Source: Macrostomum lignano
Lineage: Eukaryota
Assembly (NCBI GenBank): GCA_002269645.1
Contig: NIVC01003377.1
Coordinates: 1 to 64,000, forward strand
Reading direction: 5' to 3'
Length of the DNA stretch: 64,000 nucleotides
Both the position numbers and the translations under genes were made by a program. Positions 4,464 to 64,000 of this stretch are shown here, piece by piece; within the stretch, counting starts at the first letter, position 1; the number at the start of each line of letters is the position of its first letter. A model generated the notes under the pieces. It was not told the DNA's origin. It saw nothing but the letters and a program-made list of their open reading frames with translations, and ran no database searches.

Positions 4464-8358
<3,895 letters not shown>

Positions 8359-16300: not shown

Positions 16301-16531
16301 TAAGTTGCCAACTGCTTAGAGCAATGGTTAGGCCCTATGCTAACAAAGTTTACTACTCTTAGGCCTAGCTAATGGTTTCTTCTAACTTATATATGCACAA
16401 CCCCCTTGCCTTGATTTACACTGGCCATGCAACTTACTTGTGAAAATTGAAAAAAAACCCTAAAAAAGCACAAAATTAATGCAATTTTGGATAACTGCCA
16501 GGAGTAGGCTTAACTATGATTGTCTTATTAA

Positions 16532-17979
16532 CAGTAGGAATACCAAGCCATTTTTCCGCCCGTCGAACTACCAAGGGAGGGGGAAAAGTTTCCCCCCCCC
16601 CTGACAAATTTTTTTGCTGCGCCGGAACGGAGCAACGCAGACACACAAAATTCAAGAACACGGGCTAACTTTTTGTTGTGCACCTTCTCAAACAAGAATC
16701 AAGTCGCCAGCCCTCTGGACCGTCGAGATATTCGACGATTCTGCCAGAAGGTCGGATTTTTCCCATAAGCGCTAGTGTATTCAGTACACCCCTGTGCGCC
16801 AATCAGCACTGCGCCTCAGTGCAGCCTTGCCAAGTCTCCAAATTTCATCAGCACGTCGACCACATGTGTCTGCATCAGCTCTGACTTCGTTGGTCACTAG
16901 CCTTCACCTAGGCGGAGCTTCTGGACCTTCAACAGGTGGCACCAAGTGACTATAGATACTCTGATACGAATTTCTCGAGTTTCGCTGATCAAGCCTCGAC
17001 AGTGGGCATACCTCAACTGCTAGGTATCCTCAGCTAGTCTCTCGAGCCTTCCATCATCACCCCGACGCCGTCGGCACCTTCAACGGATTACACCAGGTGA
17101 CTATGAACACCCTGATGCAAATTTCTCTAGTTTCGCTGATCAAGCCTTGCCAATGGGCAAGCCTCAACCGCGGAACATCTTCAGCTAGTCTCTCAAGCAT
17201 TCAGTCATCACCCCGACGCCGTCGGCACCTTCAACAGATGACACCAGGCGACTATGAACACCCTGATGCAAATTTCTCTAGTTTCGCTGATCAAGCCTCG
17301 ACAGTGAGCAAGCCTCAACTTCTGGACACCCTCAGCTAATCTCTCAAGCATTCAGTCATCACTCGGACGCCGTCGGCACCTTCAACAGATGACACCAGGC
17401 GACTATGAACACCCTGATGCGAACTTCTCGAGTTTCACCGATCAAGCCTCGACAGTAGGCAAGCCTCAACTGCCGGACACCCTCAGCTAGTCTCTCAAGC
17501 ATTCCGTCATCATCCCGACTTATTGATGAGGTATGCCCACTGTCGAGGCTTGATCAGCGAAACTCGAGAAATTCGTATCAGAGTGTCCATAGTCACTTGG
17601 TGCCACCTGTTGAAGGTCCAGAAGCTCCGCCTGGGTGAAGGCTAGTGACCAACGAAGTCAGAGCTGATGCAGACACATGTGGTCGACGTGCGTATGAAAT
17701 TTGGAGACTTGGCAAGGCTGCACTGAGGCGCAGTGCTGATTGGCGCACAGGGGTGTACTGAATACACTAGCGCTTATGGGAAAAATCCGACCTTCTGGCA
17801 GAATCGTCGAATATCTCGACGGTCCGGAGGGCTGGCGACTTGATTCTTGTTTGAGAAGGTGCGCAACAAAAAGTTAGCCCGTGTTCTTGAATTTTGTGTG
17901 TCTGCGTTGCTCCGTTCCGGCGCAGCAAAAAAATTTGTCAGGGGGGGGAAACTTTCCCCCCCCCTTGGTAGTTCTACTG
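16532..17979. mobile_element. Non-autonomous foldback DNA element with ~455-bp inverted arms and internal 151-bp tandem repeats, flanked by TTAA
   Basis: 16560-17015 is the near-perfect reverse complement of 17527-17979. TTAA at 16528-16531 and 17980-17983. Termini CAGTAGGAATACCAAG vs (rc) CAGTAGAACTACCAAG. Internal unit recurs at 16981, 17132, 17283 and 17434. Confidence 0.85.
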
Positions 17980-18865
17980 TTAAGGGTACCAGTCATTTCG
18001 GTGACAAATAGTCATTTTGGTGACAAATAGTCATTTTAATTTTTGGTCACAAGTTGCTATTGTGATAGACACACTTCATTTTCAATGAAAAATCAAAGAT
18101 TTCATGAGTATTGTCATTTTAGTGATAAGAGACATTTCATAATATTTGGTTGTATTTATTTTGTTAAGATTTATATTTCCATTATATAATTTATTTAATT
18201 CATTATTAAGGCTAAATGCCTCATCATGCAATTAATGCTATATTTATATTATTTTAGGTGGGCATTTTTATGACTATCACTAGACCATCATAATTTATAG
18301 TGACCAGATCAGCTAGGTTGGCCAGAAATTGTGCATGTATATTCTAGCTTATATGGTGACAACTAATACAAAAAATATCTATGGTAGTCTTCTAATAAGT
18401 CAATAGTTATAATATAAGTCAAGTGCAATTAAGTTCAAGTTGTAGTTATAAAATATACAAATAGCATTTAATATCTAAATTTAAAAATTTTAATATTTTC
18501 ATCAATTCAATTTAAATATTTTGTTTTCTTATTTTATAAGCATAATTCATAAGGCTTTATTCCCCTTTTATAATCAATTAATGTTTTTAAATGCCCAATG
18601 CATTAATATACATAGTTATATAACTATGGGGTAGTTGCCCCTCCCTTATATAGAAACCTGAAAAAACAGAAAGGAACCAAGCAACTTTTTGCAAAAACAA
18701 AGCCACCTCTACCTTGCCCCTTTGGTTTTTACCCTCTAGAACCTCATTGCGCATGTATGTGTTTTGAGGTGAAAACATGTTTTTTGGCAAGACATATTTT
18801 TGGGTATTTTATCGCAGTCCCGAGTTGCTCAACTCTGTCCCGCAGCAGAGCTCGCCCGCTGCGCC

Positions 18866-21762
<2,897 letters not shown>

Positions 21763-39700: not shown

Positions 39701-41285
39701 CCTGTTCTCTAGAATCGCCCCTGACCAGTTCTCTAGAATCGGCCCTGACCAGTCCTAGAATCGCCCCTGGCCAGTCCCCTAGAATCGCCCCTGGCCAGTC
39801 CCTAGAATCGCCCCTGACCGGCCATTACGAACCGCTAACTCGAATTCAATCCGAATCCCAGGCGAATACAACCTGGTCGAGTACAGGTGTCCGAGCCAGA
39901 AGCTGCCCCTCGGTACGGACAGTTTCGTCCACCTGGCCAAGCACTACCGGCTGTCCGGCGCCTCCCTCTCGGAAGTTTGCGCGCACAACTTTCAGCTGGC
40001 CGCCGGCCTCGGCCTGGACAGCGCCGCCTGTCTCTGGCAGCTGGTGCTCTGCGCGTTCGGCGTCGAAGAGGAGGCCTTGGCCGCCGCTTCCGCTGCCAAC
40101 GCGGCCTCAGCAGCCGAGGCGTCGGCCAGCCTCAACTTGCCGGAGCATCAGCTCGTAGCTGATGAGCTCGCTGGCGGTGGCGGCATCAACTCCGCCTCGA
40201 TGTCCGTGACCTCGGCGTCGGCATCTGCGCCGGCCAACATGCCGAACTCCGAGTCGGTGTCCGCCCTCCTGTCGCTCGACGACGTCGATGCTGACCGTCG
40301 CCTTGGCCTTGGCGGCAGCGCTGGTGGCGGCGGCGGCAGCAGCAGCGGCGGCTTTGCCTTTATTGACGCCGGCCTGCAATCGGACAGCGCCACCCTCGAC
40401 GACGACTTCGACGGAGGCGGCGCCGGGGCCGGCGTTGGCGGCGACACGGACGTCGGCGAGTTGGACGCCGCTTCGGCTGGCGGCTTTGGCGACGCGAGCT
40501 CCAAGGAGCCGAACGACTACCTGTTCAGCGACGGCGAGCCCGCCACCGCGGACGAGGAGTTCTTCGCCGACGGGACCGGAACCGGCGCCGCGCCGCTGGA
40601 GCAGAGCCAGCTGCCGCTGCAGGGCCTGTGGCAGCAGAAGCCGCAGCAGGCTCAGCAGCATCGCAAGCGTCGGCAGCAGCGGTCGGGCAGCTGGCAGCTG
40701 CTGCAGCAACAGCAGCAGCAACAGCAGCAGCAGCCGCCGCAGCACCAGCAGGAGTTTTTGCCGTCGGATCTGCCGCCACTGACCGCCAAGCTGGAGGCCG
40801 ACCTCAGCGGCATGGTGACGGACGCGATGTACGAGCTGGTGAACTGTGGCCACGTGCAAACTGTCGCCACGGCCTGCGTGCTGCTCGGGGACCGGCTGCG
40901 GGACAAGCTGGACGAGTCCGTGGCCGAGACCTGGATGCTGAGCTACATCGACCTGCTGCACTCGCACCAGCTGTTTGTGGAGAGCGCAGCTCTGATCGGC
41001 GCCTGCGGCTTCCTGCCCAACGTGGCCCTGCTGAACCAGCAGAGCACCTCCATCAGCCTGATCTGCGCCGCCTGCAACTATCCCAGCAAGCAGGGATTCA
41101 CCTGCGCCAGGAGCCTCTGCAAGCAGCGCCCTCTGCTGTGCGTCATCTGTCATCGGACTGTGCGCGGTCTCTACCTGTGGTCCCGCGCCTGCCAGCACGG
41201 CGGCCACTTTGACCACCTCATGGACTGGTACTCCAAGAATTCCGTGTGCCCAGAGTGCGGCGCCAGTGTGGATTTCGGCATCTGA
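36760..41285 (+). CDS. WDR24: GATOR2 subunit WDR24 (WD40 propeller plus C-terminal zinc/RING region), 914 aa; exons 36760-37347, 38530-39262, 39862-41285
   Basis: VAVAGRTVFKIF; HSRSVNCVVFHP..LLSSSNDG; GTIQ|VWDIR; ITCSWHP..WLATG; VLKVRWRPDC..HIAS..DKNIYVWD; FVHLAKHYRLSG..EVCAHN; WMLSYIDLLH; CVICHRTVRGLYLW...HGGH. Splice phases 0 and 1 are consistent; 2745 nt. Confidence 0.93.
37355..38470. repeat. 32-bp minisatellite (CTGTAGCTCTGTCTGTCACCTGGCTGGATTGT)n in WDR24 intron 1
   Basis: About 35 tandem copies. Confidence 0.97.
39350..39820. repeat. 24-bp minisatellite (CTAGAATCGCCCCTGACCAGTTCT)n in WDR24 intron 2
   Basis: About 19 copies. Confidence 0.95.
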
Positions 41286-46200: not shown

Positions 46201-46946
46201 CGCCTACGAGGGCGTGAAGAAGCAGTTCCACTCCGCCGAGGACCGGGAGCGAATCGTGAAGCTCAAGTACGACGAGGTGATCGAGTGCAACAGACAGATG
46301 CTGGCCCGAGAAGACCGCCTGCATCAGACCACTCAGGAGTTCAAGGACAGACTGCAGGAGGTAAGTCTGTGGACGCCGTCCTCCCAGATCCTCAGTCGCT
46401 GGGCCACCACCCTCCCAGATCCTCAGTGGCTGGGCCAGCCTTCCAGATCTTCAGTCGCTGGGCCATCGCCCTCCCAGATCCTCAGTGGCTGGACCAGCCT
46501 CCCAGATTCTCAGTTGCTGGGCCAGCCAGCCTCCCAGATCCTCAGTTGCTGGGCCACCACCCTCCCAGATCCCCAGTTGCTAAGCCACCACCCCAGATCC
46601 CCAGATTAAAGCACAGCCGCCCCGCGCACCGCAGGGCTGCAAGGAGTACAAGCGGCTGATGAAGAAGTACAAGGAGGCTCAGCACCAGCTGCAGCGGCAG
46701 CAGCAGGCCGAGCCAGCCGAGGAGTTCCACGACGCGATCGGTGGCGACGACGAGACCGAGGAGGACGGCACCGGGACGGTCATCCACCGGCCGCCGCCAG
46801 TGGAGGTGCCGCTGACTGCCCTGACCGCCGCTGCCCCGGTTGCCGAGCTTGCCAGAGTGTGTCCGGTCTGCGATGTGACCGACTTCGCTAGCCAGACCGA
46901 CTACGAGGAGCACGTGCACAGCCACTTTGGCGAGGCGGACGACTGA
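43248..46946 (+). CDS. TAX1BP1/CALCOCO2(NDP52)-family autophagy receptor: SKICH, coiled coil and one C-terminal UBZ, 565 aa; exons 43248-43418, 44100-44404, 45344-45827, 45935-46360, 46635-46946
   Basis: SKICH: AVFTSVLSSYPVGAHIQC|..WVGLFKVGW..EFYQFCF..GLVKGASPPFLFR. A long Q/E-rich coiled coil follows. UBZ: CPVC..FASQTDYEEHVHSHF. All GT/AG phases are consistent; 1698 nt. Orthology within the CALCOCO family is unresolved. Confidence 0.9.
43495..44011. repeat. 36-bp minisatellite (CAGGGAGGGTCATAGTGGCTGCCAAATAGATTTAGT)n, intron 1 of the SKICH gene
   Basis: About 14 copies. Confidence 0.95.
44472..45310. repeat. 24/23-bp minisatellite (AACCCAGCTCTGCAACCCGCCCCC)n, intron 2 of the SKICH gene
   Basis: About 35 copies. 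Confidence 0.96.
46376..46606. repeat. ~30-bp minisatellite (CCTCCCAGATCCTCAGTCGCTGGGCCA..)n, intron 4 of the SKICH gene
   Basis: About 7 diverged copies. Confidence 0.88.
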
Positions 46947-48950
46947 CTATTTGTTGGGGACGGCTGACTGGTGATTTCATGTAAATACGCGCGTCCCAAA
47001 TCCCTGAATTGAAAAAATAAGACAAAAGATTTTGCAGAGCGCAGATCGGCACATCTTTTTCCATCGTCACTTCTTTCGGTTTTTAAGCAATTTTTTGGTA
47101 AAATTCGCATACTAACTACTATTCAGTTTTATTTCAGTAGCTAATCGTGAGTATTTAACCCGTGATAAATATAATTTTATTTGTTTACTTAACTGTTTTA
47201 TCATAGCAGCATGTTGACAAGATTACTGATTCAATCGGAAAACCTGCTTTAGTTTTTATGCACCAGCGGGGGTTTTCTTTTCGACCTCTGTCTTTTGTGT
47301 CACTGATTTGAATGTTGTAAAAATTGCCGATATGTATAGAAAGTAATATTTGTGATGGTAAGAATAACGAGTAAAAGTGTGTCCCTTTGGTTTATTTTTT
47401 TCGAGCTCTCCTTTCTGTTGTACAAATGCGTCATTATCCAGCTAACACACAGTTCCTGTGTATTTACGTAATAATTTTATTTCGTTTCGTTGATTTTTTG
47501 TATATTTGCAATTGCAACGCCTCTGTCGTCATTTCAATTTTCATTATAATTTTTTGATTGCTGCAACAAAAAAATATAAAATTTCAAACAAAAATTATCG
47601 CATTTCCTCATTCTTAATCAAGACAAACAAGAGAATCGATTTCCCAGTTAAATATTACCAACCTACTAAACAGTCGCCCACATACAATTCCTGCCTAAAC
47701 ACAATATTCTACTTTATTAATTTTCACCTCACTATTCTACTAACAGTAAAATTTATTACTGAAAAAGCTTGCGGCTAATTTGAGTATAACTCAAATATTT
47801 CTGCAGATACTGTTTTATTTTTATAGTAATTAATAAAGAATAAAAACGAGTTCAGAATAATTCTGCTAAATAATGAAATATTTTCCTAGATTTCTTGTCG
47901 CCATGGCATAAGGAAAAACTTCGGATTTGATCCACTCGCCTCGCCTTTGTCATGTCATGTCATTTCTCGTGTGCTGGGAGTTTACTCCATAGGGTTTATT
48001 TTACAGTTTTAGTATTAACGCATATAATAGATAGTACAGTATATTAAACTCTTGCTTCTTATGGATAATTTAAGGATAAATTTTAATCAGGTTTTAGAAG
48101 CTTTCACTTTAAAGTTAATAAAGAAAGTAGAAAAGTCTTTAAAAAGAACTTGAAAAAAAATTAAAAACCACTGTTGACAGGGCATTGTCATGTTTGATTA
48201 CCCTAAAAAGGGCCGTTTTTTACACTTACAGTTAATAAATCAGATTAAAAGCTTGCAATAAACTATTAATACAATTTTGCAACTGTAAAGCAACTGTGAT
48301 TAAAGAAAATCCACTATACTAAAATGTTCTACTACTGTTAACAAGGTAATCATGTTTGGTTGCCCCTGAAAGGGCCGTTTTACAATGTGGCTTTCCTTCA
48401 GTAAAGGCCTGGCCCTAGTGGTTATAAACATTTAGAAAAATTACACGTTTCTCCTTAAAAGGATAATACTTTCAGTGGCCTAATATGTGCAATTTCAATT
48501 TTATTGAAGTGCCAGTAAGTAATTAACTTATTAGTTATTATAGCCATTAGTCATTTATGCACTTATGGTATGGTATGTTGAATCACAAATTATATCAGGT
48601 AAAGTACTCACATACAGTATTCAATTTTCACAAGTGAGAACACTTATAATTGGTCTAAACTTTATAAGAACTATACCGAGAACTGCTCAGTGCTCACCAT
48701 GATCGATGTGAGAAAGTCTAAATAAAATTGGGGCCCGAAAAGGGCCGTTTTACTCAAACTACATGTAGGCTTCCAAACAACTGTCGGTATGGAACTGCGA
48801 ATTTTAATTTACGTTACTACGGTAGATATCGATTATTTGAATTAATTTAAGTTGAATTAAGTTGTCTGTCTTAATTATTTTTTAAGACGATTTTTTAATC
48901 ATAATTTTTTTTAAATTGCTAAGTGCTAATACTACGGCAAATGTTATCAA

Positions 48951-49136
48951 GAGGAAATGGAAGGCGAAAGAAGGAAGAAGAATTAGACCGAAAGGGGAGG
49001 GAGGATGACCTAAAACTGAAAGAATACACCGGATGGACAATGGAGAGGCAAAGAAGAGCAGCGAAGGACAGATAGCGGTGGCGGAAGCTGGTGCATGAAT
49101 GCGTGCGCCCATGGGCACGGTTATGACGGCCAAGGT
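48951..49136 (+). mobile_element. RTE-clade LINE ORF2 3' remnant
   Basis: Degenerate EEMEGERR..., then KEYTGWTMERQRRAAKDR*RWRKLVHECVRP..*. This resembles the RTE C-terminal pattern G.R.RGRP..W...A.DR..WR. Confidence 0.65.
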
Positions 49137-49499
49137 AAATAGAATGCTACGAGTAACGCACAACGAAGAAACATTAAAAACAAGGTGTCTGTAATACTGT
49201 AATTAAAACTGTCTAAGTCCAATTTTAGTTGACTCTTAAGATTTAGTATATACAAGCTGTTGAAACCCGCGGATTTTGAACCCGGGGAATTCCAATCCCC
49301 GGAACTATTTTTGCATGTATTCTGAAATCTAAGGCCATACACAAACAAAAACTTGTTAATAGTTAGTAGGATAGAGGTAGACATAAAATGGAGCACATTC
49401 GTGTAAAATTAGGGTTTGAGACATTGTTGGCTGGGGTACTGCGCAGAATGTCAGGCAATGTCTGTCTGACTCTAAAACATATATTGCTAAACTCTGGTC

Positions 49500-50016
49500 T
49501 CTCCCTGACTCTCCCTACGTCCCTTGGATCCTTTAAAATTTCTATCGTCTCTTTGTTTCCTCTCATCTCTCTCGTCCCTCGTCTCTCCTCTCTCCTTTCT
49601 CCCCTCTTCTCTCGTATCTTCCCTCATCTCTCTTCTCTTTCATCTCTCTTATCTCATCTCTTGTCTCTTCTTTTCTCTCTCCTCTCCTCTCTCCTCTCTA
49701 CTTTTTCGTTTTCTCTCTCCTCTCTCCTCTCTCCCCTCTCCTCTCTCCTCTCACCCCCTCTTCTCTCTGATCTTCCTTCTCCTTTCTATTCTTTTCTCTC
49801 TTCTCTTAACTCTCTCCTCTAATCTCTCATCTCTCCCCTCTTCTCTCGTCTCTTCCCTCACCTCTTTTCTCTCTCTCGTCTTTGCTCTCTCATCTTTCCT
49901 TTCTCTTCTTTGATCTTTTCTCTCTTATCTCTTCTCATTTCTCTCTGCTCCCCCTTCTCTCTCTCTCTATCTCTCTCTCTCTCTCTCTCTCTTCTCTGTC
50001 TCTCTCTCTTATCTCT

Positions 50017-50085
<69 letters not shown>

Positions 50086-50108
50086 GTTTTTCTCTCTTAT
50101 CTCTCCTC
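49500..50108. repeat. CT-rich array/(CT)n microsatellite, left flank of the palindrome
   Basis: Pyrimidine-only tract, homologous in direct orientation to 59120-59700. Confidence 0.92.
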
Positions 50109-53100
50109 ACTACTAAGGGATTCCGTAAGGCTTGATTTTGGAGGTGGGGTGGGTGTCAACCCTCCTCGCCTCTCATTGGCTGGCGCCCCGATCACTAGGT
50201 GATCGATACCCGTATCGATATCGGCGACTCGAACCCGCGACCCTCCCCAGCCGCAGGCGCACCTACCGATATTAGATCCCAATAAATCAATCAGATCCCA
50301 AATCAATCAGATCCCAAGCGCACCCTCCCGAGCCGCAGGCGCCCATGCAGCAGGCGCCCATGCCGCAGGCACCCCGAGTGTACACTCTCCCGATATGTGT
50401 GTACACCGATATGTAGTCATCGATACGGGCCTCTTCCCCTCTCTCACCTACATCTCAACTAGCGAAATCGAACCCAGGTCGCGCCCATACTAGGACACTA
50501 CACGGTTGTGGGGTATAGGGAGCGAGAAGTTTCAACCCTAACGCTGACGCAGCCCTGTACAGTGAGAGTGTACGGGCAGAGAGGGGTGGGGCGGACAGAG
50601 AACCAGCCACTAGGTTGTTATACTGTTGAAGCATAGGGAGCGAGAAGTTTTAACCCCGATGCTGACGCAGCCCTGTACACTGAGCGTGTACGGGCAGAGG
50701 GTGGGTGGAAAGAGATGTGAATAACACAGCCTGCTGCAGGAGCCGGATAGAGAGGCGCATGCTAGGACAGAGAGGTAGTGTGAGTCACACACACCCCACA
50801 GAGAAAGCCATACAGAGGATAGAGAGCTCCCTCCCCAGTTGCAGGGGACAGAGAGGCAGGCAGGGTATGCAGGGGCATGCGAACCGTCAAGGGGCCACGC
50901 GAGGATAGAGTGGAGGAGCAGAGATGTGTTTGGACAGAGAGCCAGCCACGTGTGCGTAGTGTGAGGGAACAGAAACATATGGAGCAGGAGGGAGATAGGA
51001 AGCAAACGCGCAGGGTAAGGGAGCCATGCAGCAGGGAGCAGTGTACAGTGAGACACGGGCAGGGGTGGAGCCGTGCGTGGACAGAGCTGAACGGCACGGT
51101 CAGCTGCAGGAATAGGATGATAGAGAGGCGCGGAGGGGGACAGAGAGCAGTGTGCAGGGTAGGCAGCCACGCAGGCTGGGGAACAGAGAGGCGCGTGTCA
51201 GCCAGTTACAGCCCGGGACAGAGAAGTATGAAGGGGGGCCTGGGACAGAGAAGTATGAAGGGGGGCCTGGGACAGAGTTGCGAGCAAGGCACAGAGAGAG
51301 GTAGGGTCCGGTAGCTATGTATAGGCAGGGACCCACGCGAGGGCAGGACAGGGCATGCAAGGCATGCAAATTACATGCAAGGGCAGTGAGGTGTGCGCGG
51401 AGGGAGACAGAGAGCAGTGTGTAGGGGTAGGTAACAGCAAACTTTAGTAGCGGCGCGTGCGGGGACGGAGAAACCAGTCAGAGCATACAGAGACGTTACA
51501 GAGAGGTACACAAGCAGAGACCAAAGCGAGCAGAGCACATGTGTAGGGACAGAGACGTGAGGGAGAATCGACCAAAACACGCTATGTATTTTCAAAAGTT
51601 GGTTTTAGTGCAACATGTTTAATAGTGGGTAGTATAATAGTATGTACATAGTAGGTATAATAGTAGTAATAATAGTAAGCATATTAGCCCAAAAGGTAGA
51701 CTAAAACAGGCTAAACTGTGTGTACGCATCCTCATCACCCCACAAGCCCCCTCTCCCGCCAGACTCACTCTACCAAACCCTCCTGTATTGCTGCATGAAG
51801 GAAAATATAGTGTAAAAATACAGATCTTAACCGTCAGACCGCTGAAATCAGGGCACACTAGAGGGGTTTCGGGGTCTGCATGCTCTATGTAAGCTGCTTG
51901 AGGAGGTTCCAAGGGCGTTGTGAGGGTTTCCATTATGTTTTGAAAAAAACTAGAGGCTTAAATACAACGTTTTATTCAAAAGTAGGTTATTTTAATGAAA
52001 TAGCTGACACAATCATTGTCGAGAGTAGAAATTTTTATAAGAAACCAGGCATTTTAGCAAAAATAAACCTTCAAACCACATAAAATTGAATAAAAAGCAG
52101 ACATTTTCAATTATAAACCGCAAGTATTTTAATAGAAAAGTAAGCAAACAAGGCACAAAACCAGCAAATTTTACCTTTTTATTTTAATGTTACTGATAAG
52201 GTAGAGAGTAGAAACTTGTGAGCTGTACGGAGTTAGAAAGTATTAACCATTATGTATCGTATGAATTATTAGTTCAGTACCAGCCATTGGTCAAGCGAGC
52301 ATTTATGAAGTTATTACGAGTGATGAAGGGATAGAGAGCTATATACAGGAAGACAGTATCCTTCTAAACCACCACGAACAGATTGCTAATAGAGATAAGC
52401 TTTGTCTGTGTGCAGTATGAGTAAGCGAAGGCGGGGCAAATACTTTTCCACATGCCGGACAGAACAGTATTGTGCTAGGATTTCTCTCGAAATCGCGGTA
52501 CGTTACTAGTTTTTATCACACCATCCAGATGCGTCAACTAGTCAGCAGTAGTCATTTATATGTTATTAGAACTTACAAACCCAGGTCAAGTAAATATTAC
52601 AAAGAGTATATTACGTACACACGCCAACTCCGAATACCAAGCCATACTAGTCTACTTGCAGTGCTCCTGGAGGGAAGGGACGGCGGGGTGTACATCCGGC
52701 AGGGTGGGCGTCCAGCGAGTGTACATCTGACAGGATGGGTGTTCAGCAAGTGTACATCTGACAGGGTGGGCGTTCAGCAAGTGTACCTTCAGCGTCGAGT
52801 AGGTGTACACCCGTCAGTGGGAACTCAGCCCCTCCCACCAATGTCGTGTGCACGCGGTTAGTCAGTATAGTGGTGGGGTAGACGGTGCAGGAAGGAAACC
52901 CAGATGCTGACGCTGCCCTGTACAGCGAGCAACCAGCCCTCCTGTAGCAGGAGGGGGACAGAGAGTGCGTGGAGGCAGTAGGAGATAGAGGACGCTACCC
53001 GGCATGTCGCAGCACGCGGCGCGGGACAGAGAGGCAGTGTGTAAGTCACCCCCACAGGGAGAGCTGCCCTGGCAGGAGGCGCGGGACAGAGAGGCGGTGA

Positions 53101-56100
53101 ATCACACCCCACGGAGAGAGCCGTACAGCGAGCTTCCCCACCCGAGTCCGGTAAATATTACAGAGTATTACGTGCACACGCCAGCCCTGAATACCAAGCC
53201 ATACTAGTCTACCTGCAGTGCTCCCAGAGGGAAGGGATGGTCAGGAGTTACACACCAAGAATGCATTCATACAAAGAGTACACAACTCGAGCCCAGACAC
53301 CAAGTCACAGTCTACTTACAGTAGAGATGGTAGATTAATAGCAAGATTATATTACAATTAGACCTCCCTAGCACATGAGGAGTGAAATTCAATAATAATT
53401 GAATTCAATAATAATACAACATTTAGACGTAGTAATTTAATTACAAAATACCACTAACACTGAGCCAACGAATTGTAGGTTACAAAGGAGTTGCACTCAT
53501 ATGGAAAGCCAGTATAATGCAGGTGTATATTATTAAAACATAGACAAAAACGATGCAGACGTATATACACACTATTGATTTTGTACATGTACATTTCGGC
53601 ATATTACCACACATCGCAGGCACATATTATATATCGGGGGATAGGTTAAAATACACACATCGTAGATGTAGAAGCAGACACAATGCAGGAAAATTATGAT
53701 ACGAGTGTACATATTAGTGCGTAAAAGTATCATATTATGACACCCTGTAGCACATATTGACATAATGCAGGGGAAAATATTGACAGAAATAGTACACAAT
53801 TGTAGAGGTAACAACCCGCCAACTAGTAAGGACATCCAGCACTTGTTCAGGTTTTTATTATTTCGAGACGAGTGTCATGCCCCCGCAAGAGATCTTATCA
53901 GAAATTTGTTGAACTCCACTGCAACTCTCCCAGAGCCTCCAAATGTGAGTTTTTAACCCAGGGTCGAGTACAAAGGACCCGCCCACTCTTAACCCCAAGG
54001 GGTGATCGTAGCGGAGACCAAGTACAGTGCGGACGGAGAGGGGTAACAGAAAGCGCTGCATCAGACCGCAGGGCTGCATTCCTCCCCGAGGTAGGCGCGT
54101 CAGCTCCCACTCCTCATTTAACCATCAAGTAAACTAAAGAAGTCAAGCAGAAAGCCTTACAATCACCCGCAACCAGCACAAGTAAGAGTACTTTCCACTA
54201 GAGAGCCATAGTGCAAGATTCGCGAGCCAAGTTGAAGAAGCACACCAAATTACACTAAAGACATATGTATTAAAAAGCATACCGGCACCTCTACAAAAAC
54301 ACAGTATGTACCGATTAAAGTTGCTTTTGGTGCAGTGTATTTAATAAAAGCAGGTACCTAACACAAAAGTAGGCATCAATGCAGTGCACGGGCTAAACTG
54401 TATTTACAAACGCAGGGCAACGAACTACACACAATGTAGCGCATAGACATAATTGTACGCATAAATGTACGCAATTTCCGGTATATAGGACCAAATGTAC
54501 ACAATGTACACAAACACACACACACACACACACACTCAGGCGTATTCACAGCAAGAGCTTCCTGCCGATGGCGCCATCGCCTGCGGCGATCGGTGCTGCA
54601 GGATGCGCTGCAGGATGCGCCTGAGTGTGTGTGTGTGTGTGTGTGTTTGTGTACATTGTGTACATTTGGTCCTATATACCGGAAATTGCGTACATTTATG
54701 CGTACAATTATGTCTATGCGCTACATTGTGTGTAGTTCGTTGCCCTGCGTTTGTAAATACAGTTTAGCCCGTGCACTGCATTGATGCCTACTTTTGTGTT
54801 AGGTACCTGCTTTTATTAAATACACTGCACCAAAAGCAACTTTAATCGGTACATACTGTGTTTTTGTAGAGGTGCCGGTATGCTTTTTAATACATATGTC
54901 TTTAGTGTAATTTGGTGTGCTTCTTCAACTTGGCTCGCGAATCTTGCACTATGGCTCTCTAGTGGAAAGTACTCTTACTTGTGCTGGTTGCGGGTGATTG
55001 TAAGGCTTTCTGCTTGACTTCTTTAGTTTACTTGATGGTTAAATGAGGAGTGGGAGCTGACGCGCCTACCTCGGGGAGGAATGCAGCCCTGCGGTCTGAT
55101 GCAGCGCTTTCTGTTACCCCTCTCCGTCCGCACTGTACTTGGTCTCCGCTACGATCACCCCTTGGGGTTAAGAGTGGGCGGGTCCTTTGTACTCGACCCT
55201 GGGTTAAAAACTCACATTTGGAGGCTCTGGGAGAGTTGCAGTGGAGTTCAACAAATTTCTGATAAGATCTCTTGCGGGGCATGACACTCGTCTCGAAATA
55301 ATAAAAACCTGAACAAGTGCTGGATGTCCTTACTAGTTGGCGGGTTGTTACCTCTACAATTGTGTACTATTTCTGTCAATATTTTCCCCTGCATTATGTC
55401 AATATGTGCTACAGGGTGTCATAATATGATACTTTTACGCACTAATATGTACACTCGTATCATAATTTTCCTGCATTGTGTCTGCTTCTACATCTACGAT
55501 GTGTGTATTTTAACCTATCCCCGATATATAATATGTGCCTGCGATGTGTGGTAATATGCCGAAATGTACATGTACAAAATCAATAGTGTGTATATACGTC
55601 TGCATCGTTTTTGTCTATGTTTTAATAATATACACCTGCATTATACTGGCTTTCCATATGAGTGGCAACTCCTTTGTAACCTACAATTCGTTGGCTCAGT
55701 GTTAGTGGTATTTTGTAATTAAATTACTACGTCTAAATGTTGTATTATTATTGAATTCAATTATTATTGAATTTCACTCCTCATGTGCTAGGGAGGTCTA
55801 ATTGTAATATAATCTTGCTATTAATCTACCATCTCTACTGTAAGTAGACTGTGACTTGGTGTCTGGGCTCGAGTTGTGTACTCTTTGTATGAATGCATTC
55901 TTGGTGTGTAACTCCTGACCATCCCTTCCCTCTGGGAGCACTGCAGGTAGACTAGTATGGCTTGGTATTCAGGGCTGGCGTGTGCACGTAATACTCTGTA
56001 ATATTTACCGGACTCGGGTGGGGAAGCTCGCTGTACGGCTCTCTCCGTGGGGTGTGATTCACCGCCTCTCTGTCCCGCGCCTCCTGCCAGGGCAGCTCTC

Positions 56101-59050
56101 CCTGTGGGGGTGACTTACACACTGCCTCTCTGTCCCGCGCCGCGTGCTGCGACATGCCGGGTAGCGTCCTCTATCTCCTACTGCCTCCACGCACTCTCTG
56201 TCCCCCTCCTGCTACAGGAGGGCTGGTTGCTCGCTGTACAGGGCAGCGTCAGCATCTGGGTTTCCTTCCTGCACCGTCTACCCCACCACTATACTGACTA
56301 ACCGCATGCACACGACATTGGTGGGAGGGGCTGAGTTCCCACTGACGGGTGTACACCTACTCGACGCTGAAGGTACACTTGCTGAACGCCCACCCTGTCA
56401 GATGTACACTTGCTGAACACCCATCCTGTCAGATGTACACTCGCTGGACGCCCACCCTGCCGGATGTACACCCCGCCGTCCCTTCCCTCCAGGAGCACTG
56501 CAAGTAGACTAGTATGGCTTGGTATTCGGAGTTGGCGTGTGTACGTAATATACTCTTTGTAATATTTACTTGACCTGGGTTTGTAAGTTCTAATAACATA
56601 TAAATGACTACTGCTGACTAGTTGACGCATCTGGATGGTGTGATAAAAACTAGTAACGTACCGCGATTTCGAGAGAAATCCTAGCACAATACTGTTCTGT
56701 CCGGCATGTGGAAAAGTATTTGCCCCGCCTTCGCTTACTCATACTGCACACAGACAAAGCTTATCTCTATTAGCAATCTGTTCGTGGTGGTTTAGAAGGA
56801 TACTGTCTTCCTGTATATAGCTCTCTATCCCTTCATCACTCGTAATAACTTCATAAATGCTCGCTTGACCAATGGCTGGTACTGAACTAATAATTCATAC
56901 GATACATAATGGTTAATACTTTCTAACTCCGTACAGCTCACAAGTTTCTACTCTCTACCTTATCAGTAACATTAAAATAAAAAGGTAAAATTTGCTGGTT
57001 TTGTGCCTTGTTTGCTTACTTTTCTATTAAAATACTTGCGGTTTATAATTGAAAATGTCTGCTTTTTATTCAATTTTATGTGGTTTGAAGGTTTATTTTT
57101 GCTAAAATGCCTGGTTTCTTATAAAAATTTCTACTCTCGACAATGATTGTGTCAGCTATTTCATTAAAATAACCTACTTTTGAATAAAACGTTGTATTTA
57201 AGCCTCTAGTTTTTTTCAAAACATAATGGAAACCCTCACAACGCCCTTGGAACCTCCTCAAGCAGCTTACATAGAGCATGCAGACCCCGAAACCCCTCTA
57301 GTGTGCCCTGATTTCAGCGGTCTGACGGTTAAGATCTGTATTTTTACACTATATTTTCCTTCATGCAGCAATACAGGAGGGTTTGGTAGAGTGAGTCTGG
57401 CGGGAGAGGGGGCTTGTGGGGTGATGAGGATGCGTACACACAGTTTAGCCTGTTTTAGTCTACCTTTTGGGCTAATATGCTTACTATTATTACTACTATT
57501 ATACCTACTATGTACATACTATTATACTACCCACTATTAAACATGTTGCACTAAAACCAACTTTTGAAAATACATAGCGTGTTTTGGTCGATTCTCCCTC
57601 ACGTCTCTGTCCCTACACATGTGCTCTGCTCGCTTTGGTCTCTGCTTGTGTACCTCTCTGTAACGTCTCTGTATGCTCTGACTGGTTTCTCCGTCCCCGC
57701 ACGCGCCGCTACTAAAGTTTGCTGTTACCTACCCCTACACACTGCTCTCTGTCTCCCTCCGCGCACACCTCACTGCCCTTGCATGTAATTTGCATGCCTT
57801 GCATGCCCTGTCCTGCCCTCGCGTGGGTCCCTGCCTATACATAGCTACCGGACCCTACCTCTCTCTGTGCCTTGCTCGCAACTCTGTCCCAGGCCCCCCT
57901 TCATACTTCTCTGTCCCAGGCCCCCCTTCATACTTCTCTGTCCCGGGCTGTAACTGGCTGACACGCGCCTCTCTGTTCCCCAGCCTGCGTGGCTGCCTAC
58001 CCTGCACACTGCTCTCTGTCCCCCTCCGCGCCTCTCTATCATCCTATTCCTGCAGCTGACCGTGCCGTTCAGCTCTGTCCACGCACGGCTCCACCCCTGC
58101 CCGTGTCTCACTGTACACTGCTCCCTGCTGCATGGCTCCCTTACCCTGCGCGTTTGCTTCCTATCTCCCTCCTGCTCCATATGTTTCTGTTCCCTCACAC
58201 TACGCACACGTGGCTGGCTCTCTGTCCAAACACATCTCTGCTCCTCCACTCTATCCTCGCGTGGCCCCTTGACGGTTCGCATGCCCCTGCATACCCTGCC
58301 TGCCTCTCTGTCCCCTGCAACTGGGGAGGGAGCTCTCTATCCTCTGTATGGCTTTCTCTGTGGGGTGTGTGTGACTCACACTACCTCTCTGTCCTAGCAT
58401 GCGCCTCTCTATCCGGCTCCTGCAGCAGGCTGTGTTATTCACATCTCTTTCCACCCACCCTCTGCCCGTACACGCTCAGTGTACAGGGCTGCGTCAGCAT
58501 CGGGGTTAAAACTTCTCGCTCCCTATGCTTCAACAGTATAACAACCTAGTGGCTGGTTCTCTGTCCGCCCCACCCCTCTCTGCCCGTACACTCTCACTGT
58601 ACAGGGCTGCGTCAGCGTTAGGGTTGAAACTTCTCGCTCCCTATACCCCACAACCGTGTAGTGTCCTAGTATGGGCGCGACCTGGGTTCGATTTCGCTAG
58701 TTGAGATGTAGGTGAGAGAGGGGAAGAGGCCCGTATCGATGACTACATATCGGTGTACACACATATCGGGAGAGTGTACACTCGGGGTGCCTGCGGCATG
58801 GGCGCCTGCTGCATGGGCGCCTGCGGCTCGGGAGGGTGCGCTTGGGATCTGATTGATTTGGGATCTGATTGATTTATTGGGATCTAATATCGGTAGGTGC
58901 GCCTGCGGCTGGGGAGGGTCGCGGGTTCGAGTCGCCGATATCGATACGGGTATCGATCACCTAGTGATCGGGGCGCCAGCCAATGAGAGGCGAGGAGGGT
59001 TGACACCCACCCCACCTCCAAAATCAAGCCTTACGGAATCCCTTAGTAGT
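50109..59050. mobile_element. Giant (~8.9 kb) palindromic foldback element: arms 50109-54542 and 54618-59050, 75-bp spacer
   Basis: Arms are reverse complements throughout, and the ORF track is mirrored. Termini ACTACTAAGG..CCTTAGTAGT. CTCCTC lies directly outside both ends. No ORF longer than 190 aa lies within it. The palindrome itself is certain; its mobile-element nature is inferred. Confidence 0.8.
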
Positions 59051-60400
<1,350 letters not shown>

Positions 60401-60840
60401 CTGGATTCTTTATCTGGCTTTTGAAGTAAAAGTCTGCCGATCCCTGCTTCGAAAGCCAGTTTGTGGGATGTACTACTCTCATCGTTATTCTCATGCTTTG
60501 ATCACGTCATCTTTCTTGCCAATTTGCAGCCCTGAAAGGAATTTGTGTATCTTCAGCTCCACTGCAGTCTGCATCAGTCTAACAACCAATGAAATATGCA
60601 TTTCTTAGGCCATTTAAATTTCAAAGTACTTTTAAGAGAAACTTAAAATTTCAATGGTGTGCCTAATTTAGTAGGGTTGTATTTCATTGCATCGCATCGC
60701 CTTTTCATAAATCTTTCGCTTTTACAAACCATGCTGGATTCCCTCGATTTGCCAATTGCCATCCAGTGTTAAACTGCTGCAGAGTTTGCCAATACAGAGG
60801 GGAGGGCAGTGGTTAGAATTTCTCACTAAACCGTCATGGC

Positions 60841-62138
60841 CGTAAAGACGGTCTCTGACTGTTTTTACCCTGGTTGCCTTCTGGCAGCTTGTCTAAGGGT
60901 TGTGCGCAATCCGATTGGCTATGCCAATTTCAAAGGGTCCGCCCCGGAGGGGCTGTGCCTGATCTAAAAATAAACCCTATTCTTTTTTCTAATTTCGGCC
61001 CTCGGCCTTGGTTTAGGGGGGGTGGTGCCCGGAGTGAGTAGGTTCTCTGGACTGCAGTGTGGCTAGGTCGGGACTGAGCCCCCTGGTCGTACCCGCCCTG
61101 CAGGAAAGAATGACCAATTCACAAAGGTGTACGGTAGACCCAGTAGCATGCCAGCCCTGAGGCTGAGCACCCGGGCTGCAGGCCGGCAAGCTGCCTGCTT
61201 TAGGGCTATGGTGCTCCTCCTTTCTGCCTTTCTTTTTTTCTGGGCTGGCATCCCAGCGCTGTTTTATCCCTTTAGCTTTGTGCCTTTGTGGCTTTTATTA
61301 TTTTATCCTTTTATCTGGCCACTAGAAGCCTTCCAATATTCGGAGTTATGAGCTCTGCCCTTGCCCGGTCCATCTTGCCCTGTCCTCGGGTCCATCTCCT
61401 GGCTCCTGCTGAAGGTCCCTGCTTGCGTGTCTCTGGCTCTCATCCTGACAGTGGATTGGTGTCCTGGGAAGGATGTTCGTCCCGAACCGGGGACAACCGG
61501 CTGAGTCCGGAGTCCTCTTGCCCTGGGTGCCTCTTCTCCCGACCCCTTGGCCTGGCCCCCAATAATGAGCTGGATAGGCGATGCCCTTGGGTTGGTAGCA
61601 ATAGAGGTGTATCCTGTCCGCCTAGAGTCTCCCCCTCGGATACAAGCCTTCCAGACTCACTCCAAAATAGAGCTGGGTAGTGAAAAGCCTTGAGGCTCGA
61701 GACCTACAGTTCATGCGGTTACTGTTTAGGATCGCTCTTGGTAACTAGCTGCCCAGACTCGCTCCAATAGTTTTAAGCCATTTCCGTAGGTTTAGGAGTA
61801 ACTCCTCACTCGGACCGCTTTTTTCAGTAATATTTCAAGCATTTCGCTTTCCAATTTTTCTGCGCACTCCCAAGGACTCGCTAGCTGGGGGGTGGCCTGG
61901 GTGGACTCGGTCTTAGCACCGTCCCTGATTCCACTGTTTGGGTTGGCGGTGTCTTGTACCGTAGGTTTGGGTCAACTCGCCCACCCGCGCTTTGAGCCGG
62001 GTCCAATCCCAATGCATTCCATGGGGTATCTCGGGCCCTGGACAGTTAATGCCTTGGCCCCTGGCAGTGCCCCTCTGCGGCAGAGCCCACCCAGGGCTGA
62101 TCCGCGGGTAGCCTAGCTTCCCACCCCCGTTTAACAAC
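60841..62138. mobile_element. 1.3-kb GC-richer insertion flanked by a 13-bp direct repeat (possible 5'-truncated non-LTR retroelement)
   Basis: AAACCGTCATGGC at 60828-60840 and 62139-62151; short TAACAAC tail before the right copy; no recognisable ORF. Confidence 0.55.
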
Positions 62139-62289
62139 AAACCGTCATGGCTAAACGTAGCCTCTCCACTCTGGGGGTGCAGAGAAGGCTATTAAAAAGT
62201 TGTTCCAAAACACTGTACATTCGCTATGTACATTCAGTCCTATCGCCTGACCCTTCGTCTGGCGTTGGGGGAATGAGTGAGTGAGTGGC

Positions 62290-62905
62290 ACAAACAACAG
62301 AAAAAGCAGACAAACTTCACATGCTTACAGTTTCTTTTTCGGTTGAGTTACAGAGTTGAAACTTTACATTTAGACAGAGAATGAGTCAATGAAGAATTGT
62401 GTCAAGTTTGAAGTCAATCGCTTTACGTGGAGCAAACTTATGGCAGCTGAAAGTTAGTCAATTTTGAAACCCTTTTACACATCTGGGCCCAGATTGGGAA
62501 AGAGAGGCAGGCGGGCGGAGGTTGGGGTGGCTGTCTCGCTGAAAAAAGCAGACTAACTTTAGAAGTGAACAGCGCCGTTCAGGATTAACTTTGAGACTCG
62601 AAATTTTACACGATTGTGTCACAATAGTTAAAGATTAATTGTGTCAAATTTGAAGAGAATCGGTAAAAGTGGAACGGCGCTATGGAGGATTAAGTGAAAA
62701 AATCGCGCATTTTGAGCAGTTTTTTGTACTTTTAGGTAGGAAGACTTGAGTCTAGGAAATTTAAAGGTAGCCTAAGACATTCTCCGTAGTACGTTTAGGG
62801 TGGGTGTAAAGTTTGGTGTAATTTGGTTGAGCGGTTTGGGAGTCCATAGCGAAGTAATTTGTCCACAGACAGACAGAGTTTTGATTTTTATAGGTAGAGA
62901 AGATC
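62290..62905. mobile_element. Possible Helentron/DINE-like non-autonomous element
   Basis: Begins AACAACAGAAAAAG; repeated TGTGTCAA(G/A)TTTGAAG..AATCG modules; ends CAGACAGACAGAG..TTTTATAGGTAGAGAAGAT; shares a motif with ~24990. Resemblance only. Confidence 0.4.
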
Positions 62906-63118
62906 ATTGTTACTAATTACTAACATCCATCAGAGAAGAACATTGGTAGTTCCAGTCCAGCGAATAGAAAATATTCACACGATCGATAAAATTCAACTGG
63001 CGGCGGAACACCCACCCCCCTCCGCCAGCCACCCCAATTCTTCTGGTTACTTATTCGGCCCGAGAACCGCCGTTTACTCCATCAAATTCTCACTTTACTT
63101 CACAACTCTTAGTTTTGA

Positions 63119-63448
<330 letters not shown>

Positions 63449-63537
63449 AGGCGCTCGCAGCCTGTTAGCTGTCAGGCGTCATTGACGTCTGCTTCGTCAT
63501 AACTACGCTGTGACAACCGTATCCTGAACGCTAAAAC

Positions 63538-63553
63538 GGCCCTTTTCAGGGCC
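63538..63553 (+). terminator. Histone mRNA 3' stem-loop
   Basis: AAAAC GGCCCT TTTC AGGGCC ACCAC, ~90 nt after the H4 stop; matches the SLBP-bound consensus. Confidence 0.97.
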
Positions 63554-64000
63554 ACCACATTTATGTGATGTCTTGTTCGTTCTATTTAAGCTTTGTAATT
63601 CTAAGCCTACTACTAGTACTAATGTAGAAAATAAGCACTAGCATTTCACAGTTCAAAATATAAAATTCGTATTATAATATAAATATAGTGAGGCAAGACA
63701 ACTGGAATCCCACAGTTTCATTCACACGAATCAGTGTCGATAATTTTCCGCTTATTGGAATAGAGAACCTTAAATGAATCCGTTCAAGGACCCCAGAGGT
63801 CCTGCATCTGGTATTTACATAGTTTATTAGCATTAGCATGCTGCAACGCCTGTATGTAGTCTTCCGAATAAACTACTGAAGTATCGAGTCGTTAAAAGGG
63901 TTAATTTTAAATATTCGCTTAGCTGCTGGCTTCGCTAAGAACGACCCTAAGATCGAGGCGAACGAGACTTGCAAAATCCAAAATTTGATATGTGATAGTA

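What the first reader, a model, noticed from the sequence alone, without database searches (positions are those of the whole stretch)
50109..59050. 8.9-kb near-perfect, non-coding palindrome that looks like a discrete inserted element
Two 4.43-kb arms are reverse complements around a 75-bp spacer. The differences I found are one substitution (52853 C vs 56306 A) and a few 1-nt indels, mostly in homopolymers (e.g. G5 near 53636 vs C4 near 55519). The symmetry stops abruptly. Outside it, both flanks are CT-rich on the same strand and homologous in direct orientation, as expected if a self-contained unit inserted into a pre-existing array. No transposase, integrase or polymerase is encoded. Arms of this length are far beyond ordinary MITE/foldback TIRs. 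It could be an undescribed giant non-autonomous element or an integrated head-to-head dimer of a linear replicon.
Basis: partly seen in the sequence, partly recalled or inferred. Interest (0 to 1): 0.9.

Follow-up and report, generated by a model that had tools for sequence, protein, structure and literature searches.

The report
Non-coding 8.9-kb palindrome in flatworm DNA
A nearly perfect 8.9-kb DNA palindrome without genes sits as a discrete block inside a CT-rich repeat array of the flatworm Macrostomum lignano; it is probably a real foldback-type insertion, but without raw reads or other copies I cannot show that it is mobile.

Summary
The arms are 50109-54542 and 54618-59050 (4,434 nt) around a 75-nt spacer. 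They differ by one CpG>TpG substitution and three 1-nt indels.

The window is Macrostomum lignano contig NIVC01003377.1 (assembly Mlig_3_7: PacBio CLR, Canu, Pilon).

No coding signal was found: 0 of 64 translated pieces hit Pfam. The arm has no match to plasmids or phages, and its terminal 21-mer is absent from the viral, metagenome and prokaryote-genome collections. The source genome could not be searched for further copies.

Both flanks are CT-rich on the same strand. Joined, they align collinearly with a paralogous array unit, so the palindrome behaves as an insertion. This topology is hard to get from a foldback-read artefact.

Array and palindrome lie in a 13.6-kb segment (49253-62893) missing from the paralogous subgenome contig.

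Its terminal motif ACTACYAAGGG recurs only near the ends of a second, 1.4-kb foldback at 16562-17977.

- Best reading: foldback-type non-autonomous element (0.40).
- Rival: one-off inverted duplication or captured inverted dimer (0.33).
- Rival: assembly artefact (0.17).
- Rival: replicon or virus dimer (0.03).

Interest is moderate.

The parts
49253..62893 (.). 13.6-kb segment that holds the CT arrays and the palindrome. It is absent from the paralogous contig NIVC01001673.1 (L010). It is flanked by an imperfect short direct repeat (GATTTAGTATATA on the left, GATTTTTATAGG on the right).
   Evidence: BLAST of window 43000-64000 against L010: 46380-49252 matches L010 6941-9767 (93.6%) and 62894-63642 matches L010 9761-10519 (92.5%). 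No terminal repeats, no Pfam hit in its unique parts.
49560..50108 (+). Left CT-rich imperfect microsatellite array. Unit 1 (49574-50106) is paralogous to 59127-59632.
   Evidence: TRF rows 49560-50105; direct alignment at 82.5% over 536 nt; collinear alignment of the joined flanks.
50103..50108 (+). CTCCTC, left copy of a candidate 6-nt target-site duplication (weak).
   Evidence: The same 6-mer lies at 59051-59056. Relative to the paralogous unit, the joined flanks carry one extra 6-mer. Chance of such a match in these arrays is 2.5-12%.
50109..54542 (+). Left arm, 4,434 nt, non-coding. It has alternating GC-rich and AT-rich stretches and is purine-rich on the + strand.
   Evidence: symmetry; no Pfam hit in 64 pieces; only small internal repeats; skews.
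50109..50120 (+). Terminal motif ACTACTAAGGGA at the outer tip of the left arm.
   Evidence: The exact pattern ACTACYAAGGG has 4 hits in 64 kb against 0.06 expected. All four are at or near the ends of the two inverted-repeat structures.
50240..50372 (+). Subterminal short direct repeats: a 21-nt unit twice (82 nt apart) and a 15-nt period three times. Nearby are a 16-nt tandem pair (50284-50315) and an inverted pair of ATCGATACGGG (50209-50219 and 50419-50429).
54514..54535 (+). (CA)11 tract 7 nt from the spacer, mirrored by (TG)11 at 54625-54646.
   Evidence: Sequence read. It produces the sub-threshold mir-3149 hits in Rfam.
54543..54617 (+). 75-nt non-palindromic, GC-rich spacer. It holds a 14-nt perfect palindrome (CGATGGCGCCATCG) and a 12-nt tandem pair (GCTGCAGGATGC twice), and is weakly self-complementary.
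   Evidence: Alone it folds at -19.3 kcal/mol, z = -2.0, with 6 of 200 shuffles as good. No 14-mer of it occurs elsewhere in the window or the 10 loci.
54618..59050 (-). Right arm, the reverse complement of the left arm.
59039..59050 (-). Terminal motif ACTACTAAGGGA at the outer tip of the right arm.
59051..60340 (+). Right CT-rich array. It consists of 76 nt that continue unit 1, then unit 2 (59127-59632, extending to about 59681), then further CT-rich DNA.
   Evidence: TRF 59050-60289.
16562..17977 (.). Second, 1.4-kb foldback structure. Its arms are about 454 nt with 9 substitutions and 2 indels, and 151-nt tandem repeats lie between them. It carries ACTACCAAGGG 5 nt inside each end. TTAACAGTAG occurs at 16528-16537 (+) and 17974-17983 (-).
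   Evidence: TRF 16925-17519.

Best explanation
The palindrome is a real feature of the Macrostomum lignano genome. It is an 8,942-bp non-coding foldback block that entered a CT-rich microsatellite array as one unit.

Most likely it is a foldback-type, non-autonomous DNA element made almost entirely of two 4.4-kb terminal inverted repeats. A transposase encoded elsewhere would recognise the terminal or subterminal ACTACYAAGGGA motif, cut at both symmetrical tips and join the element into a staggered break, possibly leaving the 6-nt CTCCTC duplication. The arms are near-identical either because the event is recent or because intramolecular pairing and gene conversion keep them alike. The 75-nt spacer lowers, but does not remove, the tendency of such a structure to extrude a hairpin.

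Shown:
- the structure itself;
- the absence of detectable coding sequence;
- the sharp symmetrical ends;
- the direct orientation and collinearity of the flanks;
- the motif shared with a second foldback.

Inferred:
- mobility;
- the transposase supplied in trans;
- the target duplication;
- the reason for arm identity.
For: 1. The structure and the four differences are established.
2. The flanks are in direct orientation. The joined flanks (49540-50108 plus 59051-59126) align collinearly with the paralogous unit 59090-59678 at 78.8%, with only 4+2 gap columns at the junction. This amounts to one extra CTCCTC. None of 70 control segments from the distal array extends the alignment as well.
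3. Symmetry runs exactly to the last base on both sides.
4. ACTACYAAGGG occurs exactly four times in 64 kb against 0.06 expected: at the two tips of this palindrome and 5 nt inside the two ends of the only other compact foldback in the window, each in the outward-to-inward orientation.
5. The subterminal region carries short direct and inverted repeats, as the ends of terminal-inverted-repeat transposons often do.
6. Non-coding foldback elements with kilobase inverted repeats and no known transposase are documented, for example Tetris.
7. The single substitution is CpG>TpG, a mutation-like change, which argues for two physical copies.
Against: - No second copy is known. None occurs in the rest of the window or in about 180 kb of nine other loci of the same assembly. 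That sample is only about 0.03% of the genome.
- The arms are complex sequence, not the tandem subrepeats typical of foldback elements.
- The 6-nt duplication is weak evidence in CT-rich DNA, with a 2.5-12% chance for that length alone. It also differs from the 8-10 bp reported for Tetris.
- In the small foldback the shared motif is 5-7 nt inside the end, and that element seems bounded by TTAA (or TA) rather than by a 6-nt repeat. The same enzyme is therefore not implied.
- As a plain local alignment, the 12-nt match does not exceed shuffles. Only its terminal position makes it notable, and I noticed it after the fact.
- 10 of 68 control segments from the left array extend the flank alignment as well as the true one.
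Confidence: 0.4

Rival explanations
1. A one-off structural event rather than a mobile element. There are two versions. (a) A single 4.5-kb segment already sat at this point of the CT array and was copied in inverted orientation. This could happen by fold-back priming at a break, or by a replication template switch near the (CA)n/GC-rich centre, with the copying stopped at the CT tract. (b) A hairpin-capped fragment was replicated into an inverted dimer and captured by end joining at a break in the fragile CT tract.
For: - A short non-palindromic spacer between otherwise identical arms is the expected product of fold-back priming from a short inverted repeat. The two bases next to the arms pair again after one mismatch, and the spacer is weakly self-complementary and nearly co-centred with the palindrome.
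- (CA)11/(TG)11 tracts flank the centre.
- The arms look like host DNA, with small minisatellites as in the rest of this genome, and no other copy is known.
- The region is structurally unstable: the whole 13.6-kb segment is missing from the paralogous contig.
- Templated inverted insertions at breaks by a foldback mechanism are documented, at much smaller scale (abstract of PMC11724301).
Against: - Version (a) needs the inverted copy to end exactly at the arm/CT boundary, to the base, and then to rejoin the array collinearly.
- Neither version explains the terminal motif shared with the second foldback.
- Version (b) needs both ends to escape trimming.
- No microhomology can be read from the product alone.
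Confidence: 0.33
2. Assembly or sequencing artefact. A PacBio CLR read with a missed hairpin adapter, or another foldback chimera, was built into the Canu contig, so the genome really holds one arm only.
For: - The assembly is PacBio CLR, Canu 1.4, polished with Pilon.
- Foldback and palindromic reads are a known artefact class.
- Three of the four arm differences are 1-nt length differences in base runs. That is the typical residual error of such a consensus where short reads cannot be placed uniquely.
- 36% of this assembly's length lies in scaffolds that mix subgenomes.
Against: - A foldback read is symmetrical out to its ends, so the sequence after the right arm should be the reverse complement of the left flank (AG-rich). 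It is CT-rich instead, in direct orientation. It is only about 80% identical to the left array, so it is not a re-copy, and it continues collinearly into unique DNA and a histone H4 gene.
- There are no gaps (N) in the window.
- Coverage was about 130x, which should outvote single chimeras.
- The one substitution is CpG>TpG.
Confidence: 0.17
3. An integrated head-to-head dimer of a linear replicon or virus-like genome.
For: The arm length (4.4 kb) and the inverted-dimer layout resemble replicative dimers of small linear DNA replicons (general knowledge). The spacer contains small palindromes.
Against: - No open reading frame with any Pfam match in six frames.
- No similarity to phage or plasmid records.
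- The terminus is absent from viral contigs.
- Translated pieces have no relatives (only weak repeat-like hits).
- Arms 99.9% alike cannot be reconciled with coding sequence decayed beyond recognition.
Confidence: 0.03

Closest known systems
Foldback (FB-like) transposons: Drosophila FB, Tetris (D. virilis), Galileo, Tm1 of root-knot nematodes
   Same: The element consists almost wholly of two long inverted repeats. It has no coding capacity and sharp ends. Copies without any known transposase are common (Tetris). A smaller foldback with tandem repeats lies in the same window.
   Different: - The arms are 4.4 kb of complex sequence, not arrays of subrepeats. Tetris inverted repeats reach 1,735 bp.
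- The candidate target duplication is 6 nt, not 8-10 bp.
- No other copy is known.
- The middle domain is only 75 nt.
Large arm-converting palindromes of mammalian sex chromosomes (P1-P8 and X palindromes)
   Same: Arm-to-arm identity is above 99.9%, as is maintained there by gene conversion (abstracts of PMC3723533 and PMC8600007).
   Different: Those have arms above 10 kb that carry testis-expressed gene families (abstract of PMC8327919) and, from general knowledge, kilobase-scale spacers. Here there is no gene, the spacer is 75 nt, and the locus is autosomal or unknown in a hermaphrodite flatworm.
Long nearly perfect inverted repeats in C. elegans (PMC1803023)
   Same: Long near-perfect inverted repeats in an invertebrate genome, thought to be actively kept alike (abstract).
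   Different: Those involve pairs of homologous genes. This one has no gene.
Hairpin-RNA (hpRNA) loci that give endogenous siRNAs in Drosophila
   Same: An inverted duplication with a short loop would give a long double-stranded RNA if transcribed.
   Different: hpRNA arms derive from target genes and are usually shorter. No gene-derived sequence was found. Transcription was not tested.
Foldback and palindromic long-read artefacts (missed adapter, whole-genome amplification chimeras)
   Same: Two halves of one locus on opposite strands with a short junction.
   Different: The flanks are in direct orientation, non-identical and collinear, which such reads do not produce.

Membership tests
Foldback-type transposon | Long terminal inverted repeats make up most of the element, with a short or absent middle domain. 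| tested here: met
   Arms of 4,434 nt each and a 75-nt spacer.
Foldback-type transposon | The inverted repeats are built largely of tandem subrepeats. | tested here: not met
   Only minor repeats: 27 nt x2.5, 31 nt x3.2, 16 nt x2, and two pairs of 72-105-nt repeats. The small foldback at 16562-17977 does have 151-nt tandem repeats.
Foldback-type transposon | Target-site duplication of constant length (8-10 bp in Tetris). | tested here: inconclusive
   CTCCTC lies on both sides, and there is one extra 6-mer relative to the paralogous unit. Chance is 2.5-12% in this array, and the length differs from Tetris.
Foldback-type transposon | Several copies at different loci sharing the termini. | not testable with these tools
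   The source genome cannot be searched. There is no copy in the rest of the window or in nine other 20-kb loci of the assembly. The terminal 11-mer is shared with one other foldback.
Foldback-type transposon | A transposase encoded by autonomous relatives. | not tested
   No transposase domain in the arms. The 771-aa transposon-like ORF at 10987-13302 has no similarity or terminal link to the palindrome.
Long-read foldback artefact | Symmetry continues to the end of the read or contig, or the flanks are also inverted. | tested here: not met
   Symmetry stops at 50109 and 59050. Both flanks are CT-rich on the + strand and collinear with a paralogous unit.
Long-read foldback artefact | Support comes only from chimeric reads, or there is an adapter at the centre. 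| not testable with these tools
Gene-conversion palindrome of the sex-chromosome type | Arms carry genes and the spacer is of kilobase size. | tested here: not met
   No coding signal and a spacer of 75 nt.
hpRNA locus | The locus is transcribed through both arms, and siRNAs map to the arms. | not testable with these tools
   No expression data are available here. The centre and adjacent 43 nt of each arm fold as a near-perfect hairpin, as any such palindrome must.
Integrated dimer of a linear replicon or virus | Replication or structural genes, or similarity to known replicons. | tested here: not met

The most novel reading that the evidence does not exclude
A new kind of foldback element: giant (4.4-kb), complex-sequence, non-coding inverted repeats with almost no middle domain, inserted in CT microsatellites of a flatworm. 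If transcribed, it would act as a source of kilobase-long double-stranded RNA (an hpRNA-like locus).
Probability: 0.2. Interest if true: 0.55.

Novelty: new variant of a known kind. Interest (0 to 1): 0.35.

Why it matters
Near-perfect palindromes of many kilobases with a spacer under 100 nt are expected to be fragile in eukaryotic chromosomes, from general knowledge of hairpin and cruciform cleavage. A real one in a regenerating, neopolyploid flatworm would be useful in three ways:
- as a natural case for studying how such structures arise and persist;
- as a marker of recent structural turnover between subgenomes;
- possibly as the first described foldback family of Macrostomum, or a source of long double-stranded RNA.

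If it is an artefact, it flags a class of error in a widely used reference assembly (Mlig_3_7). In either case the practical value is modest until reads and a genome-wide census are examined.

Tried and rejected
- **Exact look-up of ten arm ORFs** in the protein collection: none present.
- **Homology search with the 195-aa arm piece:** nothing.
- **HMMER scan of a 146-aa arm piece** against 1.84 billion representatives: three weak multi-stretch hits (E about 2e-4) on long proteins, read as repeat noise.
- **One protein search wasted** on a 251-aa exon piece, because the length filter excludes full-length relatives.
- **Exact scans for the terminal 21-mer** in viral, metagenome and prokaryote-genome collections, and for an internal 24-mer in metagenomes: zero. 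These collections are unlikely to hold flatworm DNA, so the result says little.
- **BLAST of arm plus spacer** against plasmids and phages: no match. A vector or bacterial origin is rejected.
- **Rfam:** only sub-threshold mir-3149 hits caused by the (CA)n/(TG)n hairpin. Rejected as trivial.
- **tRNA/SINE idea** for two T-arm-like stretches near the outer end: neither ARAGORN nor Rfam supports it.
- **T-shaped terminal-hairpin idea** for the spacer: the fold is only z = -2.0.
- **Terminal repeats of the 13.6-kb segment:** none. Coding signal in its unique parts: none.
- **Extended similarity between the two foldbacks** beyond the 12-nt motif: none.
- **Paper by Wasik et al. 2015** on the PacBio library: not held.


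Full report
**1. Observation**

The palindrome is there as described. The repeat finder splits it into four gap-free blocks. Self-BLAST gives one reverse-complement match, 50109-59050. A global alignment of the two halves sets these bounds:
- arms at 50109-54542 and 54618-59050 (4,434 nt);
- spacer at 54543-54617 (75 nt).

The arms differ at four places:
- one substitution, C at 52853 against T on the other arm; this is CpG>TpG;
- three 1-nt indels, at 53494, 53636 and 53880, two of them in runs of 4-5 bases.

All four differences lie between 52853 and 53880. Symmetry ends at A50109/T59050.

**2. Source of the window**

An exact look-up of the histone H4 protein encoded at 63137-63448 returned ten loci, all from assembly GCA_002269645.1.
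- One locus, NIVC01003377.1 positions 53137-73448, is identical to the window over the overlap. The window is therefore bases 1-64000 of that contig.
- That assembly was built from about 130x PacBio CLR reads with Canu 1.4, polished with Pilon and scaffolded with SSPACE.
[quoted passage not shown] This matches the 48 tandem-repeat rows in this window.
- The species is a neopolyploid with three subgenomes, and 36% of the assembly length lies in scaffolds that mix subgenomes.

**3. Content of the arms**

- None of 64 stop-to-stop translated pieces of at least 40 aa hits Pfam at E <= 0.01.
- No Rfam family reaches its threshold. At relaxed threshold only the (CA)n/(TG)n hairpin at the centre gives a mir-3149 score far below gathering.
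- The arm has only small internal repeats.
- It has no similarity to the rest of the window, to nine other 20-kb loci of the same assembly, or to plasmid or phage records.
- Translated arm pieces have no relatives in the protein collections.

**4. Flanks**

Both flanks are CT-rich on the + strand.
- The left array (49574-50106) is paralogous, in direct orientation, to 59127-59632: 82.5% against about 72% for off-register alignments.
- I joined the flanks in a script, as the brief permits. The joined sequence aligns collinearly with 59090-59678 at 78.8%.
- The alignment crosses the insertion point with only 4+2 gap columns, equivalent to one extra CTCCTC. That 6-mer sits on both sides of the palindrome (50103-50108 and 59051-59056).

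Controls temper this result.
- The 76 nt right of the palindrome add 47 score units.
- Control 76-mers from the distal right array add a mean of 28.6 and a maximum of 43 (0 of 70 reach 47).
- Control 76-mers from the left array add a mean of 39 and a maximum of 54 (10 of 68 reach 47).
- A matching 6-mer has a 2.5-12% chance in these arrays.

So 'a discrete block inserted into an older, tandemly duplicated CT array' is the simplest reading, but it is not proven.

**5. Wider context**

The paralogous contig NIVC01001673.1 (L010) carries the same neighbours: a SKICH-domain gene, H4, a WD40 gene and Ssu72.
- Window 46380-49252 aligns with L010 6941-9767 at 93.6%.
- Window 62894-63642 aligns with L010 9761-10519 at 92.5%.
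- The 13.6 kb in between (49253-62893) is missing from L010. This stretch holds 308 nt of unique DNA, both CT arrays, the palindrome and 2.55 kb of unique DNA.
- The segment is bracketed by an imperfect short direct repeat.
- It has no terminal repeats and no coding signal.

I cannot say whether it is an insertion here or a deletion there. It does show that the locus is structurally young relative to the subgenome split.

**6. A second foldback and a shared tip**

The only other compact inverted repeat in the window is at 16562-17977.
- Its arms are about 454 nt and differ by 9 substitutions and 2 indels.
- 151-nt tandem repeats lie between them.
- It carries ACTACCAAGGG 5 nt inside each end, while the giant palindrome begins and ends with ACTACTAAGGG.
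- The pattern ACTACYAAGGG occurs exactly at these four places in 64 kb, against 0.06 expected from shuffles. It occurs nowhere in the nine other loci.

Caveats:
- The two members of each pair are copies of each other, so this is one coincidence, not four.
- As a plain local alignment the 12-nt match is within shuffle scores.
- The motif is offset from the small element's ends.
- That element seems bounded by TTAACAGTAG on both sides, which suggests a TTAA or TA target rather than a 6-nt duplication.
- I noticed the match after the fact.

I take it as a moderate hint that the tips are transposon-like.

**7. Artefact or real?**

Palindromic reads are a known product of missed adapters, strand follow-on and whole-genome amplification. 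Three of the four arm differences look like residual CLR consensus errors in a repeat that Pilon cannot polish. The topology, however, argues against an artefact.
- A foldback read is symmetrical out to its ends, so the right arm should be followed by the reverse complement of the left flank (AG-rich).
- Instead a CT-rich array follows, in direct orientation. It is only about 80% like the left one and is collinear with it.
- The contig then runs on into unique DNA and genes.
- The window has no N.
- The substitution is of a mutational type.

I put the artefact at 0.17, because I could not see reads or compare the spacer with adapter sequences.

**8. Mechanism**

- *Foldback-type mobile element (0.40).* For it: sharp symmetrical tips, a clean insertion, a possible short duplication, the shared tip motif, subterminal repeats, and the precedent of non-coding foldback families such as Tetris.
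- *One-off inverted duplication or captured inverted dimer (0.33).* For it: the short non-palindromic and weakly self-complementary spacer, the CA/TG tracts at the centre, host-like arm sequence, the lack of any known second copy, and the unstable neighbourhood. Against it: the need for base-exact ends at the CT boundary.
- *Replicon or virus dimer (0.03).* No positive evidence.

Arm identity of 99.9% means either a very recent origin or ongoing arm-to-arm conversion, as in other large palindromes.

**9. Novelty and score**

If real, this is a new variant of a known kind: a foldback or long inverted repeat with unusually long, complex arms and a tiny spacer. It is not a new category. Interest is 0.35.

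- a sequencing hairpin-adapter sequence;
- short end motifs of several well-known transposons;
- a tRNA T-loop/box-B consensus;
- a histone stem-loop consensus;
- part of the canonical histone H4 protein.

None was of a virus, toxin or effector. None was entered into a tool, and none is used as evidence here. I stopped when I noticed and have deleted nothing. No repaired, consensus or ancestral sequence was built. The only joined sequence was the two flanks used to model the empty site.

Noticed in passing
window 16562-17977: A 1.4-kb foldback structure. Its arms are about 454 nt with 9 substitutions and 2 indels, and 151-nt tandem repeats (16925-17519) lie between them. TTAACAGTAG occurs at both outer sides (16528-16537 on the + strand, 17974-17983 on the - strand), and there is a 27-nt extra stretch at the left end. 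It looks like a TTAA- or TA-flanked non-autonomous transposon.
   Followed up: partly
window 10987-13302 (+): An intact 771-aa ORF with a C-terminal PHD-type zinc finger and no other known domain. Relatives at 28-52% identity sit on short JGI, ENA and Logan contigs, in hagfish and in a beetle. One relative carries a Ulp1 protease domain, and one 92%-identical fragment is fused to an RNA polymerase subunit in a metaclust entry. It is probably a transposon-derived protein of unclassified type.
   Followed up: partly
window 49253-62893 versus L010 9761-9767: A 13.6-kb presence/absence difference between two subgenome copies of the SKICH-H4 intergenic region, bracketed by an imperfect 11-13-nt direct repeat.
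   Followed up: partly
window 48198-48217, about 48360-48380, and 48730-48749 (- strand): Three hairpins that resemble the 3' stem-loop downstream of the H4 gene (63535-63554). They lie in AT-rich DNA with no histone coding sequence beside them. They may be remnants of histone genes or a small repeat.
   Followed up: no
window 63137-63448 (+): An intact histone H4 gene. The same protein is encoded at 10 or more loci of the assembly in two- or three-fold paralogous neighbourhoods, which shows the subgenome structure.
   Followed up: yes
window, whole; for example 2956-4193, 6175-7259, 19374-21292, 32170-34134, 37444-38470: Very dense minisatellites with periods of 12-41 nt and up to 90 copies. 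Several lie inside long open reading frames or next to exons.
   Followed up: no
L005 3634-4398 / 7060-7824; L006, L008 and L011 about 14.8-16.4 kb; L007 and L010 about 14.9-19.6 kb: Inverted arrays of tandem repeats with kilobase spacers are frequent in this genome. They are conserved between paralogous contigs, so they are real. None is a unique-sequence palindrome.
   Followed up: no
window 40561-40640 (-): ARAGORN calls an 80-nt tRNA-Gln(CTG) inside a GC-rich, glutamine-rich ORF of the WDR24-like gene. Rfam does not support it, so it is probably spurious.
   Followed up: no
window 48332-48341 (-): A third exact TTAACAGTAG with a partly similar neighbourhood to the right end of the small foldback. 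It may be a solitary terminus.
   Followed up: no
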